Shown one piece after another: positions 1,814 through 52,000 of a DNA stretch of 64,000 bases. This DNA comes from Hemiscyllium ocellatum (Eukaryota). The position numbers and the translations under genes are program-made. Each line of letters starts with the position of its first letter. Positions within the stretch are counted from its first letter, which is position 1. The stretch spans positions 37,783,090 to 37,847,089 of the forward strand of contig NC_083435.1 in the NCBI RefSeq assembly GCF_020745735.1, given 5' to 3'. The notes under the pieces are model-generated. The model saw nothing but the letters and a program-made list of their open reading frames with translations, made no database searches and had not been told where the DNA came from.

Positions 1814-2145
1814 CTCAGCCCTTTCTGGAGACCGGGCCCACCCTCCATCAGCAGGAAGTCATGGATAAGAATGTGGAACTGAAGCTGATGAGCAAATCTG
1901 AGCCCCAGCTCAAAACACAGCCCTTACAGAGAGAGTCCAAATATCCACGTGGCCTGGAAGAAGGGAATAAAGCCACAAATGAAGAAGAGAATCCCTCAGA
2001 AACAGACAAATTAAATCCTGCAAGCAATGTTTCTGATGGAAACACAGTGAAATATCATCTAGGTAGCAATGTAACTGAATTCTTACCCACCAGTGAGGAA
2101 CAAGAGGCAATGCAGAGTTTATTGAGGCCGTGCAATCCACATTGA
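1814..2145 (+). CDS. Putative terminal cytoplasmic-tail exon of an upstream MHC class I paralog (long frame, about 110 aa, E/K/S/N/P-rich)
   Basis: Acceptor ttccag at 1808-1813. Phase-1 entry gives (A)QPFLETGPTLHQQEVMDKNVELK...RPCNPH*, matching the phase-1 donor of the class I TM exon. Near-identical copy downstream of the in-window class I gene. The link to a class I gene is inferred from position. Confidence 0.5.
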
Positions 2146-2294
2146 GAAAGATCCCCATTACAACCCAACACTAGTCTGTGTACCCCAGAGTTTGGAGGAA
2201 CTGAAAATAATTGCCAGGGCGTAGAAATTGAAATCAATGTGGATGGCAAGCTGCATTCACAAGGGAAAGGAAGGTCTGATTGTATTTATAAATG

Positions 2295-7223: not shown

Positions 7224-8070
7224 ATGGCAGCACAGGCAGTGGAGTGTTCCTCCTGCAGGATGTTTGAGGTAGGGGTGACCACCGATGTCCTGCCGACTTC
7301 GTCTGCAGGAAGTGCAGCCAGCTCCAGCTCCTCACAGACCGCGTTAGGGATCTGCAGCTGGAGTTGGATGAACTGAGGATTATTCGAGAGGCTGAGAGGG
7401 CGATAGATAGAAGCTACAGGGACATAGTTACATCAGAGAACAGAGGTAGCTGGGTAACAGTTAGAGGTGGGAAGGGGAGGAAGCAGGCAGTGCAGAGATC
7501 CCCTGTGGTCATTCCCCTCAACAATAAGTATACCGCTTTGGATACTGTTGGGGGGGACGGCCTAGCAGGGGTAAGCTGTAGTGACCGGGTCTCTGGCACA
7601 AGGTCCGGCTCTGAGACTCAGAAGGGAAAGGGGGAGAGGAGGAGAGCACTGGTTATAGGAGACTCTATAGTTAGAGGACGGACAGGCGGTTCTGTGGACA
7701 TGGGCGAGACTCTCGGATGGTTTGTTGTCTCCTGGGTGCCAGGGTCCAAGATGCCTCGGACCGTGTCTTCAGAATCCTTAAAGGGGAGGGTGTGCAGCCA
7801 GAAGTCATGGTGCATATTGGCTGGAAGCTAAAAGCTAGGACGGACAGAGTCGTCATCTCTGGGTTGTTGCCGGTGCCACATGACAGTGAGGCAAGGAATA
7901 GGGAGAGAGTGCAGTTGAACATGTGGCTGCAAGGATGGTGTAGGAGGGAGGGCTTCAGGGTATTTGGACAATTGGACTGCATTCTGGGGAAGGTGGGACC
8001 TGTACAAGCAGGACGGGTTGCACCTGAACCAGAAGGGCGCCAATATCCTGGGGGGTAGGCTTGCTAGCAC
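7224..8070 (+). pseudogene. CR1 ORF1 (zinc-finger/SGNH esterase type), frameshifted
   Basis: MAAQAVECSSCRMFEV N-terminus; esterase block ALVIGDSIVRG; VVISGLLPVP; split over several ORFs. Confidence 0.85.
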
Positions 8071-8224
8071 TCTTCGGGGGGGGGTTTAAACTAATTTGGC
8101 AGGGGGATGGGATCCGGACTTGTAGTCCAGCAAGTAGGTTAGCTGTTTTTCAGGATGTCCAGGAACGCAGGGAGGCTGTGGAGAAGGTAGCACTGACAGG
8201 AAATACTTGCGGACATAGAGATGG

Positions 8225-10770
8225 GTTCAAGTGTGTATACTTCAACGCAAGGAGTATCAGAAATAAGGTGGGTGAACTTAAGATGTGGATCGGTACCTGG
8301 GACTACGATGTTGTGGCCATCACAGAAACGTGGATAGAAGAGGGACAGGAGTGGTTGTTGGAGGTTCCTGGTTACAGATGTTTCAGTAAGATTAGGGAGG
8401 GTGGTAAAAAAGGAGGGGGTGTGGCGTTGCTAATTAGAAATGGTATAATGGCTGCAGAAAGGCAGTTCGAGGGGGATCTGCCTTTGGAGGTAGTATGGGC
8501 TGAAGTCAGAAATAGGAAAGGTGCAGTCACCTTGTTGGGTGTTTCCCCCCAATAGCAGCAGAGATGTGGAGAAACAGATTTTGGAAAGGTGCAGAAGCCA
8601 TGGGCGATTTCAACTTCCCAAATATTGATTGGAAGCTGTTTAGATCAAGTAGATTGGAGGGGACGGTGTTTGTGCAGTGTGTCCAGGAAGCTTTTCTAAC
8701 TCAGTATGTAGATTGTCCGACCAGAGGGGAGGCCATATTGGATTTGGTACTTGGTAACGAACCGGGACAAGTGATGGGCTTGTTAGTGGGTGAGCATTTT
8801 GGTGATGGTGACCATAATTCTGTGACTTTCACCTTGGTTATGGAGAGAGATAGGTGCGTGCAACAGGTTAGGTTTTACAACTGTGGGAAGGCAAGACAGG
8901 ATCTGAGGAGCATAAGTTGGGAGCACAGGCTGTCAGGGAAGGATGTCATTGAAATGTGGAACTTTTTCAAGGAACAGATACGAAGTGTCCTTGATATGTA
9001 TGTACCTGTCAGACAGGAAAGAGATGGTCGTGTGAGGGAACCTTGGTTGACGAGGGAGGTTGAATGTCTAGTAAAGAGGAAGAAGGATGCTTACATAAGG
9101 TTGAGGAAACAAGGTTCAGACAGAGCGTTGGAGGGATACAGGATAGCCAGGAGGGAGCTGAAGAAAGGGATTAGGAGAGCTAAGAGAGGGCATGAAAAAT
9201 CTTTAGCGGATAGGATCAAGGATAATCCCAAGGCCTTTTATGCGTATGTGAGAAACATGAGAATGACGAGAACGAGGGTAGGTCCGATCAAGGACAGTAG
9301 TGGGAGACTGTGCATTGAGTTGGAAGAGATAGGAGAGGTCTTGAATAAGTACTTTTCTTCAGTATTTACAGATGAGAGGGACCGTATTGTTGAAGAGGAG
9401 AGTGTGAAACGGACTGGTAAGCTAGAGGAGATACTTGTTAGGAAGGAAGATGTGTTGGGCATTTTGAAAAACTTGAGGATAGACAAGTCCCCCGGGCCTG
9501 ACGGGATATATCCTAGGATTATGTGGGAAGCAAGAGAGGAAATTTCAGAGCTGTTGGCAATGATCTTTTCGTCTTCACTGTCAATGGGGGTGGTACCAGG
9601 GGACTGGAGAGAGTGGCGAATGTTGTGCCCCTGTTCAAAAAAGGGAATAGGGATAACCCCGGGAATTACAGGCCAGTTAGTCTTACTTCGGTGGTAGGCA
9701 AAGTAATGGAAAGGGTACTGAGGGATAGGATTTATGAGTATCTGCAAAGACACTGCTTGATTAGGGACAGCCAGCACGGATTTGTGAAGGGTAGGTGTTG
9801 CCTTACAAGACTTATTGAATTCTTTGAGGAGGTGACCAAGCATGTGGATAAGGGTAGAGCAGTGGATGTAGTGTACATGGATTTTAGTAAGGCATTTGAT
9901 AAGGTTCCCCACGGTAGGCTTATGCGGAAAGTCAGGAGGCATGGGATAGTGGGAAATTTGGCCAGTTGGATAGAGAACTGGCTAACCGGTCGAAGTCAGA
10001 GAGTGGTGGTAGATGGTAAATATTCAGCCTGGAGCCCAGTTACAAGTGGAGTTCCGCAGGGATCAGTTCTGGGTCCTCTGCTGTTTGTAATTTTTATTAA
10101 TGACTTGGAAGCGAGAGTCGAAGGGTGGGTCAGTAAATTTGCAGACGATACAAAGATTGGTGGAGTTGTGGATAGTGAGGAGGGCTGTTGTCGTTTGCAA
10201 AGGGACTTAGATATGATGCAGAGCTGGGCTGAGGAGTGGCAGATGGAGTTCAACCCTGTCAAGTGTGACATTGTCCATTTTGGAAGGACAAATAAGAATG
10301 CGGGATACAGGGTTAACAGTAGGGTTCTTAGTAAGGTGGAGGAGCAGAGGGATCTTGGGGTCTATGTTCATAGATCTTTGAAAGTTGCCACTCAGTGGAT
10401 AGAGCTTGTAAGAAGGCCTATGGTGTGTTAGCGTTCATTAGCAGAGGGATTGAATTCAAGAGTCGTGAAGTGATGTTGCAGCTGTACAGGACCTTGGTAA
10501 GGCCCCATTTGGAGTACTGTGTGCAGTTCTGGTCGCCTCACTTTAGGAAAGATGTGGAAGCTTTGGAGAGGGTGCAGAGGAGATTTACCAGGATGTTGCC
10601 TGGACTGGAGAATAGGTCGTACGAGGATAGGTTGAGAGTGCTAGGTCTTTTCTCATTGGAACGGCGAAGGATGAGGGGTGACATGATAGAGGTTTATAAG
10701 ATGATCAGGGGAATAGACAGTCAGAGACTTTTTCCCCGAGTGTTGCAAGAGGACATAAATTTAAGGTGAA
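8225..10770 (+). pseudogene. CR1 ORF2 (AP endonuclease plus reverse transcriptase), frameshifted
   Basis: YFNARSIRNK, VAITETW, GDFNFP, LDLVL (EN); PGNYRPVSLTS, YMDFSKAFDKVPH, QGSVLGPLLF, FADDTK (RT); broken into 4 ORFs. Confidence 0.95.
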
Positions 10771-14427: not shown

Positions 14428-14500
14428 ATGGGATGCTGCACTCCCAGAATGTTGCTGATCCTTTTTCCCATCTTCTGGTGTTTCTCCCGGGTCTCTGCGG
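14428..14500 (+). CDS. MHC class I exon 1 (leader peptide)
   Basis: MGCCTPRMLLILFPIFWCFSRVSA+G, then donor gtgagt at 14501 (phase 1); alternative ATG at 14449; hydrophobic core and VSA cleavage motif. Confidence 0.85.
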
Positions 14501-17770: not shown

Positions 17771-18759
17771 TTTGTTCAGTCTGGCTTGGGCAGACCTAGT
17801 AACCAGTAACTGCCATCACCTTGCCTATTTGCACATACCCCGATGGCCATTTTGAGAATTGGCCACATGCTCCAAAATTGGAACTATCATCCATCATGTC
17901 AACAATGGTTGAGCTTGTTGTGTTGTTCAGTTATTGAACAATGGGAAATTTAGAAAAGTAATCAATCACAAGGCTGTCCTCTTCCTTGATACATGAGTAA
18001 GTCCTCTACTTTCATCTGAGGACAGGATGGATCGTTATGCGGATTTAGAGGCTTCTTCTGCTATTAAAGTTGATAGTTTTTTTGGAATACTTCACATGCA
18101 TCCACAAGTACTGAATTTCCTGATTCCATTCCTGGCCAATGCAGAGGTGCATGTGCTAGCTCTTTTGGACATTCACTCAGCGTTCACTCTAAGCTGCGTA
18201 ACTGTGCCATACACAGCTGCTCTGATCTTCCATGATGATTGTTGGCACACCAATCATGGCATTGGTCTCTGGTTCCAGACGTTGCTGCTACGCGTGGGTC
18301 GTGGGCAATACGGGGTAATTTAGCACGGCCAGTGCACATCTTTGCACTGTGGGAGGAAACCCACACAGGCACTGGGAGAATGTGCAAACTCCACCCAGAC
18401 AGTCATCTAAGGATGTGATTGAACACCGGTCCCTGGTGGGCTATGTGCTAACCACTGAGCCACCATGCTAACTTGTCATGACAGAGGTATGGCTGCACAT
18501 TTCTGAAGGAGCCTAAGAACCTTCTGCCAGAAATGCAGAGGTCTTTCTATATGTAAAAAAACAAGAGAATGGAGTGTGTTACTATCTGGGTGTTATAATC
18601 AGAAACTCCACTGACTGCAGTACTGTTTGTAGCTGCTTTTTGAGACAGTGGATTTGACAGTTTGAGTGACTCCTGTCATTGATTATAGGGTTTTTGGGAA
18701 TGGGCTTTGCTTGACTGAGTACACAAACCTGACCCTTTCACTTTTGTTTAAATCTACAG

Positions 18760-19020
18760 ACAGCAAAATTTACACTGCAGCCTTTATGGCTGTCTCTGGC
18801 ACAACTGACCTGCCTGAATACTTTGGTGCAACAATGATCAATGGAGTTCCTGTGACCTATTATGACAGTGACACCCGTCAGACAGTCTCCTTGCAGCAGT
18901 GGATGACAGATGCGTACGATGCTAATTACTGGAAAATTCTCACAAAGCAAGGGAACGAACATTCTGCCAAGGCAAGGGAGAACCTGAGGACGGTCATGAA
19001 AAGTGCAAACCAAACGTCTG
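18760..19020 (+). CDS. MHC class I exon 2 (alpha1 domain, 87 aa)
   Basis: Acceptor tctacag/, donor /gtaaga, 261 nt, phase 1-1. DSKIYTAAFMAVSG...YYDSD...QQWM...NYW...NQTS has the class I alpha1 pattern including the N86 sequon. Confidence 0.95.
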
Positions 19021-21812: not shown

Positions 21813-22088
21813 GAGTGCATATTTTGCAATTCATAAGGACTGTTGTGATCACTGCTGATGGCTCTATTAAGAGATCGATGAATGTTGGGTTTGATGGAAA
21901 GGACTTTATCAGTTTAGAGCCGGACAGAATGAGATGGGTCGCAGCAAATCACTTTGCAGTGAAGATCAAGGAGAACTGGGATTCGGATAAAGCGTGGAAC
22001 AGGCATTGGAAATGGCATTTGGAAGAGGAACTTGTTGAGCGTTTAAAATCACGTTTACACTTCGGAAAACAATACTTTGAAAGGAAAG
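21813..22088 (+). CDS. MHC class I exon 3 (alpha2 domain, 92 aa, no cysteines)
   Basis: Acceptor tttggcag/, donor /gtatgt, 276 nt, phase 1-1; GVHILQ...GFDGKDFISL...WVAAN...KENWD...LEEELVERLK...GKQYFERK. Confidence 0.95.
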
Positions 22089-22204: not shown

Positions 22205-22483
22205 TTCAGCCTGAAGTGTTCATCTCCAGGAGGGAGCCCAATGGTCAGGACAAGCCGCTCACTCTCTCCTGCCTGGTCACTGGGTTTTATCCTGCAGACA
22301 TCGAGGTGACCTGGCTAAGGAATGGAGAGGTCATGTCTGAGACCCAATCCTCGGGGGTTCGACCGAACCACGATGGGACCCATCAGATCCAGAAAGAGAT
22401 TGAGATCAATGCTGGGGATGAGGATCAATACTCCTGTCAAATTGAACACAGCAGCCTGGCAGAGGGCAAGCTCTATCAGTGGG
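22205..22483 (+). CDS. MHC class I exon 4 (alpha3 Ig-C1 domain, 93 aa)
   Basis: Acceptor cccatcacag/, donor /gtaagg, 279 nt, phase 1-1; LSCLVTGFYP, VTWLRNG, RPNHDGTHQ, YSCQIEHSSL. Confidence 0.97.
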
Positions 22484-22493
22484 GTAAGGGACT

Positions 22494-22494
<1 letters not shown>

Positions 22495-22529
<35 letters not shown>

Positions 22530-22549
22530 TGTCTGTCTGTCTGTCTGTC
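22495..22549 (+). repeat. Compound (GT)n(CTGT)n microsatellite at the start of intron 4
   Basis: Directly visible. Confidence 0.95.
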
Positions 22550-23289
22550 TTTTGAATCCTTTCCACCATTCAACAAGATTATGGATGATTTTCCCCACAA
22601 TTTAATTGAAAATCCTAAAACTTTAAAGTACACTATGAATTCTACTCTGTTATTCGACATGACCATGGCTAGTCATTGTCCTCCAATCCTCTTGACTCTC
22701 TGCTTCCCAGATGCCCTGATTCCTTGAGAAACCAAAGACCTCCCAATCCCAGTCTTAAGGATACTTAGAAAGTCTGACTTGATGGATCATTTTCTTGACA
22801 TTTTTATTATTTATGTTGCTGACGGACACTGAAACATATTCACAAGAACCTACAGTGACTCTTCAAACACAGGGCACGGGTTAGTTACACAAAAGGAAAC
22901 AACGCAGGACAGTTAGAACGACATTAACACAAACAGAAAAACAAAGTTTCATTGTGTTTATTCTTTTTAAAGATGCTCAATTCCAAAGAAATTCCACTGT
23001 CAGCTTTACACTTGAGTTTTTGAGTTCACAAATCCACCCAAATTCTGTTTGATTAGTTGATCCATACCCAAGTGTCTGTCCCACTATCGCTGGACATTTG
23101 TGGGAGCCTTTTCTTTGAGCTGGGTTCTCTCACTTATTTCATCTCTTCACTATGGTGGGTTCACTGCAGTAAATTAGCACCAATTCCTGGAGTTAGATTG
23201 GACCAAGTGCTTTTTTTTTTAAGTGTCGGCACTGTTTCTCTGTCTTTTTCTTCATTATCAGCTCAGCCCAGTTTCCCACAGTCAGTTCA

Positions 23290-23600
23290 GATTAGATTCC
23301 CTACAGTGTGGAAATAAGCCCTTCGGCCCAACCAGTCCACACCGACCCTCCGAAGGGTAACCCACCCAGTCCCATTTCCCTCTGACTAATGCACCTAACA
23401 CTACAGGCAATTTAGTCATGACCGATTCACCCGACTTGCACATCTTTGGACTGTGGGAGGAAACCAGAGCACCCAGAGGAAACCCACACAGACACGGGGA
23501 GAATGTGCAAACTCCACACAGACGGTCACCCAAGGCTGAGAATTGAACCTGGGACCCTGGTGCTGTGAGGCAGCAGTGCTAACCACTGAGCCACCGTGCC
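23290..23600 (-). mobile_element. tRNA-derived SINE in intron 4
   Basis: Reverse-strand ggcacggtggctcagtggttagcactgctgcc head and B box gggttcaattc. Confidence 0.9.
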
Positions 23601-23960: not shown

Positions 23961-24068
23961 AAGAAAACGGAGAGTGGTCCCACCTTTCCATAATACTTAT
24001 TATTACTGGATCAGTCGCTGGACTGGCGGTTATATTCGGGATAATCAGCTGGAGACGGTCATACAGAG
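23961..24068 (+). CDS. MHC class I exon 5 (connecting peptide, TM, stop-transfer)
   Basis: Acceptor caaattctag/, donor /gtaaga, 108 nt, phase 1-1; EENGEWSHLSIILIITGSVAGLAVIFGIISWRRSYR. Confidence 0.9.
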
Positions 24069-35365: not shown

Positions 35366-35611
35366 GCCTCAGTATCATTTGCAAATTAACTAACCATGCC
35401 TCCTATATTTGTTTCTAAATCATTTTATATAAACGACAAGAAGCAGTCAGCTGATTCAACAAGAAATCCAAAACAGCTGTTCGATATAAATCCTTGAAAA
35501 GAACTTTAAAATGTAATGATTCCAAATTTACTGTTACTGGCCTGTTAATAGGGACATTTACATTTTTCTCAGTTATAACGCGGTTTAATATTTTCATTAA
35601 TTCCCGCTCAG

Positions 35612-35935
35612 GTCTTTCTGGAGACCGGGCCCACCCTCCATCAGCAGGAAGTCATGGATAAGAATGTGGAACTGAAGCTGATGAGCAAATCTGAGGCCCA
35701 GCTCAAAACACAGCCCTTACAGAGAGAGTCCAAATATCCACATGGCCTGGAGGAAGGGAATGAAGCCGTAAATAAAGAAGAGAGTCCCTCAGAAACAGAC
35801 AAATTAAATCCTGCTAGCAATGTTTCTGATGGAAACACAGTGAAATATCATCTAGGTAGCCATGTAACTGAATTCTTAACCACCAGTGAGGAACAAGAGG
35901 CAATGCAGAGTTTATTCAGAAAGAACCTGTTCTGA
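35612..35935 (+). CDS. Putative terminal cytoplasmic-tail exon of the in-window class I gene (acceptor and frame uncertain)
   Basis: Paralog of 1814-2145. The long frame VFLETGPTLHQQEVMDK...SLFRKNLF* needs phase-0 entry at 35612. Direct phase-1 joining from the TM exon gives GLSGDRAHPPSAGSHG* (stop 35659-35661). Confidence 0.45.
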   Translation, partial: VFLETGPTLHQQEVMDKNVELKLMSKSEAQLKTQPLQRESKYPHGLEEGNEAVNKEESPSETDKLNPASNVSDGNTVKYHLGSHVTEFLTTSEEQEAMQSLFRKNLF

Positions 35936-45420: not shown

Positions 45421-46420
45421 ACAGGGCTCAGTGTTGGGGCCACAGTTGTTCACGTTATATATTAATGATCTGGATGAAGGGACTGGGGGCAATCTAGCGA
45501 AGTCTGCCGATGATACGAAGTTAGGTGGGCAGGCAGGTAGTACTGAGGAAGTGGGGAGGCTGCAGAAGGATCTAGACAGTTTGGGAGAGTGGTCCAGGAA
45601 ATGGCTGATGGAATTCAATGTGAGCAAATGCGAGGTCTTGCACTTTGGAAAAAAGAATAAAAGCGTAGACTACTTTCTAAACGGTGAGAAAATTCGTAAA
45701 GCCAAAGTACAAAGGGATCTGGGAGTGCTAGTCGAGGATTCTCTGAAGGTAAACATGCAGGTTGAGTCCGTGATTAAGAAAGCGAATGCAATGTTGTCAT
45801 TTATCTCAAGAGGGTTGGAATATAAAAGCACCATTGTGCTACTGAGACTTTATAAAGCTCTGGTTAGGCCCCATTTGGAGTACTGTGTTCAGTTTTGGTC
45901 CCCACACCTCAGGAAGGACATACTGGCACTGGAGCGTGTCCAGCAGAGATTCACACGGATGATCCCTGGAATGGTTGGTCTAACATATGAGAATGGCTGA
46001 GGATCCTGGGATTGTATTCATTGGAGTTTAGAAGAGTAAGGGGAGACTTAATAGAAACTTTCAAGATAATAGATGGCTTGGAAAGGGTGGACGCTAGGAA
46101 ATTGTTCCGTTAGGCGAGGAGAGTAGGACCCGTGGACACAGCCTTAGAATTAGAGGGGGTCAATTCAGAACAGAAATGCGGAGACATTTCTTCAGCCAGA
46201 GAGTGGTGGGCCTGTGGAATTCATTGCCACAGAGTGCAGTGGAGGCCGGGACGCTAAATGTCTTCAAGGCAGAGATTGATAGATTCTTGATGTCACGAGG
46301 AATTAAGGGCTACGGGGAGAATGTGGGTAAGTGGTGTTGAAATGCCCATCAGCCATGATTAAATGGCAGAGTGGACTTGATGGGCCGAATGGCTTTACTT
46401 CCACTCCTATGTCTTACGTT
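45421..46420 (+). mobile_element. 5'-truncated CR1 LINE, inserted in copy 2 only
   Basis: ORF 45431-46000 LGPQLFTLYINDLD..SADDTKLGG..RPHLEYCVQFWSP; the site is empty in copy 1 near 3855. Confidence 0.9.
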
Positions 46421-49094: not shown

Positions 49095-52000
49095 GTCATA
49101 GAGTCATAGAGATGTACAGCACGGAAACAGACCCTTCAGTCCAACCTGTCTATGCCAACCAGATATCCCAACCCAATACAGTCCCACCTGCCAGCACCCG
49201 GCCCATATCCCTCCAAACCCTTCCTATTCAAATACCCATCCAAATTCCTATTAAATGTTGCAATTGTACCAGCTTCCACCACTTCCTCTGGCAGCTCATT
49301 CCATACACGTACCATCCTCTGCGTGAAAAAGTTGCCCCTTAGGTCTCTTTTATATCTTTCCCCTCTCACCCTAAACCTATGCCCTCTAGCTCTGGACTCC
49401 CTGACCCCAGGGAAAAGACTTTATCTATTTATCCTATCCATGGTCCTCATAATTTTGTAAACCTCTATAAGGTCACCCCTCAGCCTCCGACACTCCAGGG
49501 AAAACAGTCTCAGCCTGTTCAGCCTCTCCCTATAGCTCAGATCCTCCAACCCTGGAAACATCTTTGTAAATCTTTTCTAAACCCTTTCAAGTTTCACAAC
49601 ATCTTTCCGATAGGAAGGAGACCAGAATTGCACGCAATATTCCAATAGTGGCCTAACCAATGTCCTGTACAGCCGTAATGTGACCTCCCAACTCCTGTAC
49701 TCATTACTCTGACCAATAAAGGAAAGCATACCAAACGTCTTCTTCACTATCCTATCTATCTGCGACTCTACTTTCAAGGAGCTATGAACCTGTTCCACGG
49801 TCTCTTTGTTCAGCAATAATCCCTAGGACCTTACCATTAAGTGTATATGTCCTGCTAAGATTTACTTTCCCAAAATGCAGCACCTTGCATTTATCTGAAT
49901 TAAACTTCATCTGCCACTTCTCAGCCCATTGGCTCATCTGGTCCAGATCCTGTAAAACTCTGAGGTAACCCTCTTCGCTGTCCACTACACTTCCAATTTT
50001 GGTGTCATCTGCAAACTTACTAACTGTACCTCTTATGCTCACATCCAAATCATTTATGTAAATGACAAAAAGTAGAGGACCCAGCACCGATCCTTGTGGC
50101 ACTCCACTTGTCACAGGCCTCCAGTCTGAAAAACAACCCTCCACCACCACCCTCTGTCTTCTACCTTTGAGCCAGTTCTGTATCCAAATGGCTAGTTCTC
50201 CCTGTATTCCATGAGATCTAACCTTGCTAATCAGTCTCCCATGGGGAACCTTGTCGAACACCTTACGGAAGTCCATATAGATCACAGCTACTGCTCTGCT
50301 CTCATCAATCCTCTTTGTTACTTCATCAAAAAACTCAATCAAGTTTGTGAGATATGATTTCCCACGCACAAAGCCATGTTGACTATCCCTTGCCTTTCCA
50401 AATACATGTACATCCTGTCCCTCAGGATTCCCTCCAACAACTTGCCTACCACTGAGGTCAGGCTTACCGGTCTATAGTTCCCTGGCTTATCTTTACCGCC
50501 CTTCTTAAACAGTGGCACCACGTTTGCCAACCTCCAGTCTTCTGGCACCTCACCTGTGACTGTCAATGATACAAATATATCAGCAAGGGGCCCAGCAATC
50601 ACTTCTCTAGCTTCCCACAGAGTTCTCGGGTACACCTGATCAGGTCCTGGGGATTTATCCACCTTTAACCATTTCAAGATATCCAGCACTTCCTCCTGTG
50701 TAATCTGGACATTTTGCAAGATGTCACCATCAATTTCCCTACAGTCTATATCTTCCATATCCTTTTCCACAGCAAATACTGGTGGAAAGTATTCATTTAG
50801 TATCTTCCCCATTTTCTGAGGCTCCACACAAAGGCCGCCTTGCTGATCTTTGAGGGGCCCTATTCTCTCCCTAGTTACCCTTTTGTCCTTCATATATTTG
50901 TAAAAACCCTTTGGATTCTCCTTAATTCTATTTGCCAAAGCTATCTCATGTCCCCTTTTTGCCCTCCTGATTTCCCTCTTAAGTATACTCCTACTGCCTT
51001 TATACTCTTCTAAGGATTTACTCGATCTATCCTGCTGTGCCTGACATATGCTTCCTTCTTTTTCTTAACCAAACCCTCATTTTCTTTAGTCATCCAGCAT
51101 TCCCTATACCTACCAGCCTTCCCTTTCACTCTAACAGGAATATACTTCCTCTGGATTCTTGATATCTCATTTCTGAAGGCTTCCCATTTTCCAGCCGTCC
51201 CTTTATCTGCGAACATCTGCCTCTAATCAGCTTTTGAAAGTTCTTGCCTAATACCGTCAAAATTGGCCTTTCTCCAATTTAGAACTTCAACTTTCAGATC
51301 TGGTCTATCCTTTTCCATCACTATTTTAAATCTCATAGCATTATGGTCGCTGGCCCCAAAGTGCTCTCCCATTGACGTCCCAGTCACCTGCCCTGCCTTA
51401 TTTCCCAAGAATAGGTCAAGTTTTGCACCTTCTCTAGTAGGTACATCCACATACTGAATCAGAAAATTGTCTTGTACACACTTAAGAAATTCCTCTCCAT
51501 CTAAACCTTTAACACTATGACAGTCCCAGTCGATGTTTGGAAAGTTAAAATCCCCTACCATAACTACCCTATTATTCTTACAGATAGCCGAGATCTCCTT
51601 ACAAGTTTGTTTCTCAATTTCCCTCTGACTATTAGGCAGTCTATAATACAATCCCAATAAGGTGATCAGCCCTTTCTTCTTTTTCAGTTCCACCCAAATA
51701 ACTCCCTGGATGTATTTCCGGGAATATCCTCCCTCAGCACAGCTGTAATGCTATCCCTCATCAAAAATGCCACTCCCCCTTCTCTCTCGCCTCACTTTCT
51801 ATCCTTCCTGTAGCATTGTATCCTGGAACATTAAGCTGCCAGTCCTGCCCATCCCTGAGCCATGTTTCTGCAATTGCTATGATATCCCAGTCCCATGTTC
51901 CTAACCATGCCCTGAGTTCATCAGCCTTCCCTGTTAGGCCCCTTGCATTGAAATAAATGCAGATTAATTTATTAGTCCTACCTTGCCCCTGCCTGCCCTG

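What the first reader, a model, noticed from the sequence alone, without database searches (positions are those of the whole stretch)
21813..22088. Intact MHC class I gene whose alpha2 domain lacks both cysteines of the C101-C164 disulfide
Seen: five exons join in phase with no stop. In HLA-A2 register (anchored on GVHxLQ, DGKDF, W133, W147, LE, GK), position 101 is Val (QFIRTVVIT) and 164 is Leu (LEEELVERL). Alpha1 and alpha2 contain no cysteine at all, while the alpha3 disulfide, N86 glycan and beta2m-contact residues (Q96, D119, G120, D122, R234, P235, D238, Q242) are kept. Established: C101-C164 is among the most conserved class I features, including in most non-classical molecules. Inference: replacing both Cys with hydrophobic residues in an otherwise clean ORF suggests a functional, more flexible or reshaped platform rather than decay. 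It may belong to a described shark non-classical lineage (e.g. the multigene UEA family) or to an undescribed one; I cannot assign it here.
Basis: partly seen in the sequence, partly recalled or inferred. Interest (0 to 1): 0.8.

Follow-up and report, generated by a model that had tools for sequence, protein, structure and literature searches.

The report
Shark UEA-type class I gene, disulfide-free
This is an intact-looking non-classical MHC class I gene of the epaulette shark whose alpha2 domain does lack the usual disulfide, but about 100 related genes in sharks lack it too, so the loss marks an old multigene family (almost certainly the described UEA lineage) and is not special to this gene.

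Summary
Exon 21813-22088 is a class I alpha2 exon with Val (GTT, 21842-21844) at HLA position 101 and Leu (CTT, 22031-22033) at position 164. The mature alpha1/alpha2 platform has no cysteine. The alpha3 pair, the N86 sequon and the beta2m-contact residues are kept.

The loss is not private to this gene. About 100 shark proteins from 13 species form one clade. In a 48-member alignment, 47 carry Val at position 101 (one Ile, never Cys). Position 164 is one of the more variable platform sites (L, F, Y, S, G, D and sometimes an unpaired C). At least 15 paralogues lie in this genome, and the scan had already flagged the same trait in 8 other windows.

The family is multicopy, found only in sharks, only about 30% identical to shark classical UAA, and has lost 6 of 8 peptide-end anchors. 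By elimination it is the published UEA lineage (Almeida et al. 2021). That paper is not held, so I could not check whether the Cys loss is already described there.

The gene looks functional: alpha2 dN/dS is 0.35, its tree branch is short, and the AlphaFold platform pLDDT is 85-94. Two caveats remain. Its long-tail splice acceptor is CG rather than AG, and I could not confirm transcription. Verdict: real, ordinary for its family, low novelty.

The parts
14428..14500 (+). Leader exon (MGCCTPRMLLILFPIFWCFSRVSA plus 1 base), donor GTGAGT
   Evidence: Signal-peptide scan. Identical to P0255 residues 457-480.
18760..19020 (+). Alpha1 exon, no Cys, NQT sequon at its end. Y7 is replaced by A and Y84 by S; Y59 is kept.
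   Evidence: Pfam MHC_I; numbering check.
21813..22088 (+). Alpha2 exon (the finding), no Cys
21842..21844 (+). Codon GTT = Val at HLA position 101 (normally Cys)
   Evidence: Val in 47 of 48 aligned family members.
22031..22033 (+). Codon CTT = Leu at HLA position 164 (normally Cys)
   Evidence: Variable in the family: L21 F10 C5 Y3 G3 S3 D2 T1.
22205..22483 (+). Alpha3 exon (C1-set Ig domain) with both Cys and the beta2m-contact residues R234, P235, D238, Q242
   Evidence: Pfam C1-set E 6.9e-19; invariant columns.
23961..24068 (+). Connecting peptide and transmembrane exon, donor GTAAG
35607..35935 (+). Terminal (cytoplasmic tail) exon in the long-tail frame, stop TGA at 35933-35935. The intron ends in CG (35605-35606) instead of AG. 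The canonical AG at 35610-35611 would instead give a 16-residue tail (GLSGDRAHPPSAGSHG) and a 348-aa product.
   Evidence: The RefSeq model P0255 uses the CG site.
1814..2157 (+). Terminal exon of the upstream tandem paralogue (its other exons lie before the window), with an intact AG acceptor at 1812-1813
   Evidence: It is the first half of the fused model P0255.

Best explanation
The gene is one tandem member of the shark-specific, multicopy non-classical MHC class I family that matches the published UEA lineage. In the family's common ancestor, before galeomorph and squalomorph sharks split, Cys101 on the beta-sheet floor was replaced by Val, and that Val has stayed essentially fixed. With its partner gone, helix position 164 was no longer constrained to be Cys. 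It now differs between paralogues (L, F, Y, S, G, D, occasionally an unpaired C), as do the neighbouring groove positions 159, 163, 167 and 171. In this gene's sublineage the pair is Val/Leu, conserved from Heptranchias to Hemiscyllium. Inferred, not shown: the Val-Leu hydrophobic contact takes the place of the covalent tether; the molecule is a beta2m-associated membrane protein; and its groove no longer clamps peptide ends (6 of 8 anchors replaced), so it probably carries a non-peptide or unconventional ligand or acts as a receptor ligand. This copy keeps an intact ectodomain and TM. Its long cytoplasmic-tail acceptor is mutated, so it probably has a short tail or a weakly spliced long one.
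For: Class I identity. Family-wide state: the closest alpha2 relatives all lack the pair. Across 112 aligned proteins, position 101 is V in almost all shark members and never C, apart from one mis-modelled row, while outgroups are C/C. In the maximum-likelihood tree the shark family is one clade (SH-aLRT 100). The gene sits in a 5-row orectolobiform clade (100) inside a 17-row clade (99) that includes Heptranchias, and that clade is nearly all V/L. Entropy: position 101 ranks 155th of 178 platform sites and position 164 ranks 18th. Codons GTT and CTT each lie two steps from TGT, via TTT (Phe), the second most common state at 164. Constraint: alpha2 dN/dS 0.35 against a whale-shark paralogue; terminal branch 0.027; beta2m contacts and the glycan site invariant; AlphaFold2 platform pLDDT 85-94 per 10-residue block. 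UEA assignment: the family is multicopy (at least 15 clusters in this species), seen in 13 shark species, and absent from rays above 37% identity. It is about 30% identical to shark UAA 6LUP. The literature names only UBA (derived from UAA) and UEA as expanded shark families (PMC12562908; PMC10751288).
Against: No named UEA reference sequence could be compared, so the assignment is by elimination. The terminal-exon acceptor is CG, and the tail's dN/dS against the neighbouring copy is about 1 on 15 differences, so part of the gene may be relaxed.
Confidence: 0.8

Rival explanations
1. This copy is a young pseudogene or a decaying duplicate, and its clean ORF only reflects recent duplication or gene conversion.
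For: The long-tail acceptor AG has become CG. Tail-exon dN/dS is about 1.05 against the neighbouring copy. RefSeq annotates the gene only as the second half of a read-through fusion model. There is no confirmed RNA. Alpha2 is 99% identical to paralogue P0163 while alpha1 is about 85% identical, which is compatible with gene conversion.
Against: Five exons have canonical sites and no stop. The terminal branch is short (0.027), and the split from P0163 predates the Hemiscyllium-Chiloscyllium split. Many of its alpha1 residues match the whale-shark orthologue and not the paralogue. A canonical AG 5 nt downstream still gives a complete 348-aa membrane protein.
Confidence: 0.1
2. The family is an undescribed shark class Ib lineage distinct from UEA.
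For: No sequence named UEA was available in any tool. All database names are automatic ('F10 alpha chain-like').
Against: The family is very large, found in all shark genomes sampled, and lies on the MHC chromosome. A comprehensive survey reports only UBA and UEA as multicopy and finds no class Ib gene outside these clusters (PMC10751288; PMC12562908). A family this size could hardly have been missed.
Confidence: 0.08
3. The Cys loss is a private, recent adaptation of this one gene.
For: None beyond the gene itself.
Against: Val101 is shared by 47 of 48 aligned members from 13 species, and the same trait was noted in 8 other windows.
Confidence: 0.01

Closest known systems
UEA non-classical class I lineage of sharks (Almeida et al. 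2021, J Immunol 207:824; cited in PMC10751288 and PMC12562908)
   Same: It is a multicopy, shark-only family on the MHC chromosome. The peptide-end anchors are not conserved, and it is distant from UAA.
   Different: Nothing contradictory was found. The identity rests on elimination and not on comparison with named sequences. Whether that paper reports the missing alpha2 disulfide could not be read.
Shark classical class I UAA (PDB 6LUP)
   Same: The fold and domain order are the same, as are the alpha3 disulfide, the N86 glycan and the beta2m-contact residues.
   Different: It is only about 30% identical. UAA keeps Cys101-Cys164 and the peptide-end anchors.
Shark UBA (the expanded family derived from UAA)
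   Same: It is also a multicopy shark class Ib family.
   Different: UBA is said to derive from UAA (PMC12562908). This family is no closer to shark UAA than to bird or fish class I.
Loss of the homologous Cys11-Cys74 pair in the other membrane-distal domain (class I alpha1, and class II alpha1 of tetrapods and elasmobranchs; Wu et al. 2021, PMC8236899)
   Same: It is a precedent that an MHC membrane-distal domain tolerates loss of the sheet-to-helix disulfide.
   Different: That paper describes the alpha2/beta1-side pair as well conserved, because it stabilises a part not supported by an Ig domain. Here it is that pair which is lost.
UFA/UGA CD1-like shark class Ib genes
   Same: They are non-peptide-type class Ib genes in the same MHC-Ib cluster.
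   Different: They are single or low copy, whereas this family is highly multicopy.

Membership tests
MHC class I heavy chain | An alpha1-alpha2 MHC_I platform plus a C1-set alpha3 domain and a TM, with one exon per domain in phase 1 | tested here: met
   Pfam PF00129 and PF07654; exon phases; Foldseek E 1e-25 to class I chains.
Classical (peptide-presenting) class I | Cys101-Cys164 disulfide | tested here: not met
   Val and Leu at these positions.
Classical (peptide-presenting) class I | Eight conserved peptide-end anchors (Y7, Y59, Y84, T143, K146, W147, Y159, Y171) | tested here: not met
   A, Y, S, I, N, W, H, R, so only Y59 and W147 are kept. Based on a hand alignment anchored on HMMER alignments.
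UEA | Large multigene family within a species | tested here: met
   At least 15 distinct 90% clusters from Hemiscyllium ocellatum, all on one 49.3-Mb contig; 8 other windows flagged.
UEA | Present in sharks, not detected in rays or chimaeras (feature recalled from the paper's abstract) | tested here: met
   Hits come from 13 shark species, including the squalomorphs Heptranchias and Pristiophorus. The best ray hits are 36-37% identical and carry both Cys.
UEA | MHC linkage, in the class Ib cluster with UDA | tested here: inconclusive
   All members are on one chromosome-scale contig. Unchecked scan notes place class II and other class Ib genes on the same piece. The flanking framework genes were not examined here.
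UEA | Clusters with named UEA reference sequences | not testable with these tools
   No named UEA sequence was returned by any search. The primary papers are not held.
UBA (alternative) | Close derivation from UAA | tested here: not met
   30% identity to shark UAA 6LUP. That chain ranked 38th or lower in both the sequence and the fold searches.

The most novel reading that the evidence does not exclude
The disulfide was lost once, through Cys101 to Val, at the base of a family more than 250-350 million years old. That loss turned helix position 164 from a structural residue into a paralogue-specific groove determinant, with unpaired Cys re-appearing in several sublineages where it could bind a ligand covalently. 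If the UEA literature has not described this, it would be the first large class I family known to work without the alpha2 tether.
Probability: 0.3. Interest if true: 0.5.

Novelty: new member of a known kind. Interest (0 to 1): 0.27.

Why it matters
The alpha2 disulfide is usually treated as a near-universal structural requirement of class I molecules. A family of dozens of genes per genome has kept beta2m contacts, the glycan site and purifying selection for hundreds of millions of years without it. That shows the tether is dispensable, and it offers a natural system for asking what the disulfide contributes to groove stability and ligand choice. For this particular gene the result is mostly bookkeeping. 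It is one more UEA-type copy, mis-annotated in RefSeq as half of a fusion model, with a damaged long-tail acceptor.

Tried and rejected
- **Sequencing runs:** both sequencing-run searches returned only holders guessed to be RNA, with 0.26-0.74 of the words. This is suggestive but is not proof of expression.
- **Literature:** the UEA and UDA primary papers could not be opened by PMC id or DOI. Three further literature searches found no statement on Cys in UEA.
- **Verissimo 2023 supplement:** it labels genes only 'MHC-Ib', not by lineage.
- **Ortholog DNA:** none could be fetched for proper dN/dS because the files were too large or not on record.
- **Locus L001:** it turned out to hold the orthologue of the upstream paralogue, not of this gene.
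- **Transcript-derived protein:** none identical to this gene exists in the protein collection.
- **Compensating disulfide:** I looked for one elsewhere in the platform. Family members have none or a single unpaired Cys, with no consistent pair.
- **Complex with beta2m:** not run, because no genuine shark beta2m sequence was obtained. The two hits named 'beta-2-microglobulin-like' are alpha3 fragments of this family.
- **Other class I exons:** the window has none apart from the upstream gene's last exon.

Full report
**What is in the sequence**

The interval 21813-22088 is a 276-nt exon with an AG acceptor and a GT donor. Pfam places it on positions 93-177 of the MHC_I profile (E 5.9e-12). The neighbouring exons are an alpha1 half-platform (18760-19020) and a C1-set alpha3 domain (22205-22483).

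HMMER alignments to solved class I chains put Val opposite Cys101 and Leu opposite Cys164. The codons are GTT at 21842-21844 and CTT at 22031-22033.

A leader exon lies at 14428-14500 with a GTGAGT donor. A connecting-peptide and TM exon lies at 23961-24068. All five exons are in phase and free of stops. The only cysteines in the product are three in the signal peptide and the alpha3 pair.

**Gene model and annotation**

The window holds only one set of class I domain exons. The cytoplasmic-tail exon occurs twice, at 1814-2157 and at 35607-35935. The first copy belongs to an upstream tandem paralogue.

RefSeq protein P0255 (XP_060706702.1, LOC132832638, Hemiscyllium ocellatum, 897 aa) is a read-through fusion of that upstream gene with this one. 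My six-exon model translates exactly to its residues 457-897.

The long-tail frame needs an acceptor whose last intron bases are CG (35605-35606). The upstream copy has AG at that point. A canonical AG five bases downstream would give a 16-residue tail and a 348-aa protein. Between the two tail copies in the window there are 3 synonymous and 12 non-synonymous differences, an omega of about 1. The ectodomain is clean, but the tail of this copy may be changing or decaying.

**The Cys loss is a family trait**

An exhaustive HMMER search with the alpha2 exon found six close representatives at 58-70% identity, then a drop to about 41%. All six lack the pair. They come from horn shark, basking shark, bamboo shark and catshark.

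Word-indexed searches gave about 100 relatives from 13 shark species. These include the squalomorphs Heptranchias perlo and Pristiophorus japonicus, and at least 15 distinct clusters from the epaulette shark itself. The best ray proteins are only 36-37% identical and keep both cysteines.

In a 112-row alignment, position 101 is Val in nearly every shark member. It is never Cys, apart from one mis-modelled row (P0010). Position 164 is L, F, Y, S, G, D, W, H or T, or an unpaired C in about ten members.

In a curated 48-row alignment, position 101 is V47/I1 and ranks 155th of 178 platform sites for entropy. Position 164 (L21 F10 C5 Y3 G3 S3 D2 T1) ranks 18th. The positions ranked above it include 65, 69, 73, 84, 159, 167 and 170, and position 163 is tied just below it.

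There is no compensating cysteine pair. Members have either no platform Cys or a single one. The scan had already noted the same trait in 8 other windows of this chromosome.

**Phylogeny**

I built a maximum-likelihood tree of 79 rows. Fused models and rows under 93% coverage were left out, and the two trait columns were excluded.

- The shark family comes out as one clade (SH-aLRT 100).
- This gene falls in a five-row orectolobiform clade (100) with whale shark, brown-banded bamboo shark and the epaulette paralogue P0163.
- That clade sits inside a 17-row clade (99) that includes Heptranchias and is almost uniformly V/L.
- The gene's own branch is short (0.027), and its split from P0163 predates the Hemiscyllium-Chiloscyllium divergence.

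GTT and CTT are each two steps from TGT, via TTT. Phe is the second most common state at 164, and F, Y, S, G and W are all single-step neighbours of TGY. This fits one early loss of Cys101 followed by free drift or diversification at 164. On the tree, several of the unpaired Cys164 residues could be re-gains and not retentions.

**Is it functional?**

- Against a whale-shark paralogue (L002), alpha2 has dN 0.25, dS 0.70 and omega 0.35.
- Alpha3 has omega 0.38 with dS of only 0.11, which suggests homogenisation of that exon.
- Q96, G120, D122, R234, P235, Q242, the alpha3 cysteines and the sequon are invariant across the family. D119 and D238 are nearly invariant (at least 90%).
- AlphaFold2 with the family alignment gives block-mean pLDDT of 85-94 over the whole platform, with normal strands and helices.
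- Foldseek finds ordinary class I chains at 29-34% identity, including shark UAA 6LUP at 30%.
- Six of the eight peptide-end anchors are replaced (A7, S84, I143, N146, H159, R171), so classical peptide clamping is unlikely.

Expression could not be shown. Runs that hold the exon words are only guessed to be RNA.

**Which family is it?**

The literature available here lists the shark class Ib lineages as UBA and UEA (the two expanded families, UBA being derived from UAA) and UDA, UFA and UGA (single or low copy). All of them map to the MHC chromosome (PMC10751288; PMC12562908).

A shark-only family with dozens of copies that is no closer to shark UAA than to bird class I fits only UEA. From memory of the abstract of Almeida et al. 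2021, UEA is a complex multigene family in sharks that was not detected in rays or chimaeras. It lacks the invariant peptide-binding residues and has a hydrophobic groove. That agrees with what is seen here.

The paper itself is not held. I could therefore neither compare named sequences nor see whether the missing disulfide is reported there.

**Context**

Wu et al. 2021 (PMC8236899) call this cysteine pair well conserved because it stabilises a region not supported by an Ig domain. They note that the homologous pair in the other membrane-distal domain was lost repeatedly. Grimholt et al. 2015 (PMC4364491) report the alpha2 pair as kept in the teleost S and P lineages. A whole family without it is thus unusual among class I molecules, but it is a property of the lineage and not of this gene.

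**Verdict**

Novelty is low, since it is a new member of a known kind. The residual interest lies in the family-level pattern of a fixed Val101 and a variable position 164, which may or may not already be described.

The rest of the window is LINE debris.

Noticed in passing
window 35595-35612 versus 1802-1819: The long-tail acceptor of the terminal exon is AG in the upstream paralogue and CG in this gene. An AG 5 nt downstream shifts the frame to a 16-residue tail. RefSeq's model nevertheless uses the CG site.
   Followed up: partly
window 1814-2157 and 14428-35935 (P0255): RefSeq LOC132832638 (XP_060706702.1, 897 aa) is a read-through fusion of two tandem class I genes, joined by a short linker upstream of this gene's start codon. 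It is very likely an annotation artefact.
   Followed up: partly
window 22205-22483 versus L002 22751-23026: The alpha3 exon has dS 0.11 against a whale-shark paralogue from another sublineage, while alpha2 has dS 0.70. Alpha3 is also nearly invariant across the family. This suggests concerted evolution or very strong constraint on that exon.
   Followed up: partly
alignment A1, first-sequence positions 41, 68 and 160: Many family members carry a single unpaired platform Cys: position 41 in 15 of 48, position 68 in 7, and HLA position 164 in 5. Two members have both C41 and C164. No consistent new disulfide is apparent.
   Followed up: partly
window 22490-22555: A (GT)n then (GTCT)n microsatellite starts a few bases after the alpha3 donor site.
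   Followed up: no
window 8061-10431 (+), 45431-46000 (+), 49782-51693 (-): There are LINE fragments with endonuclease and reverse-transcriptase ORFs between and beside the class I genes. tRNA-derived SINE-like elements lie in introns 1 and 4 (about 18330-18480 and 23380-23600).
   Followed up: partly
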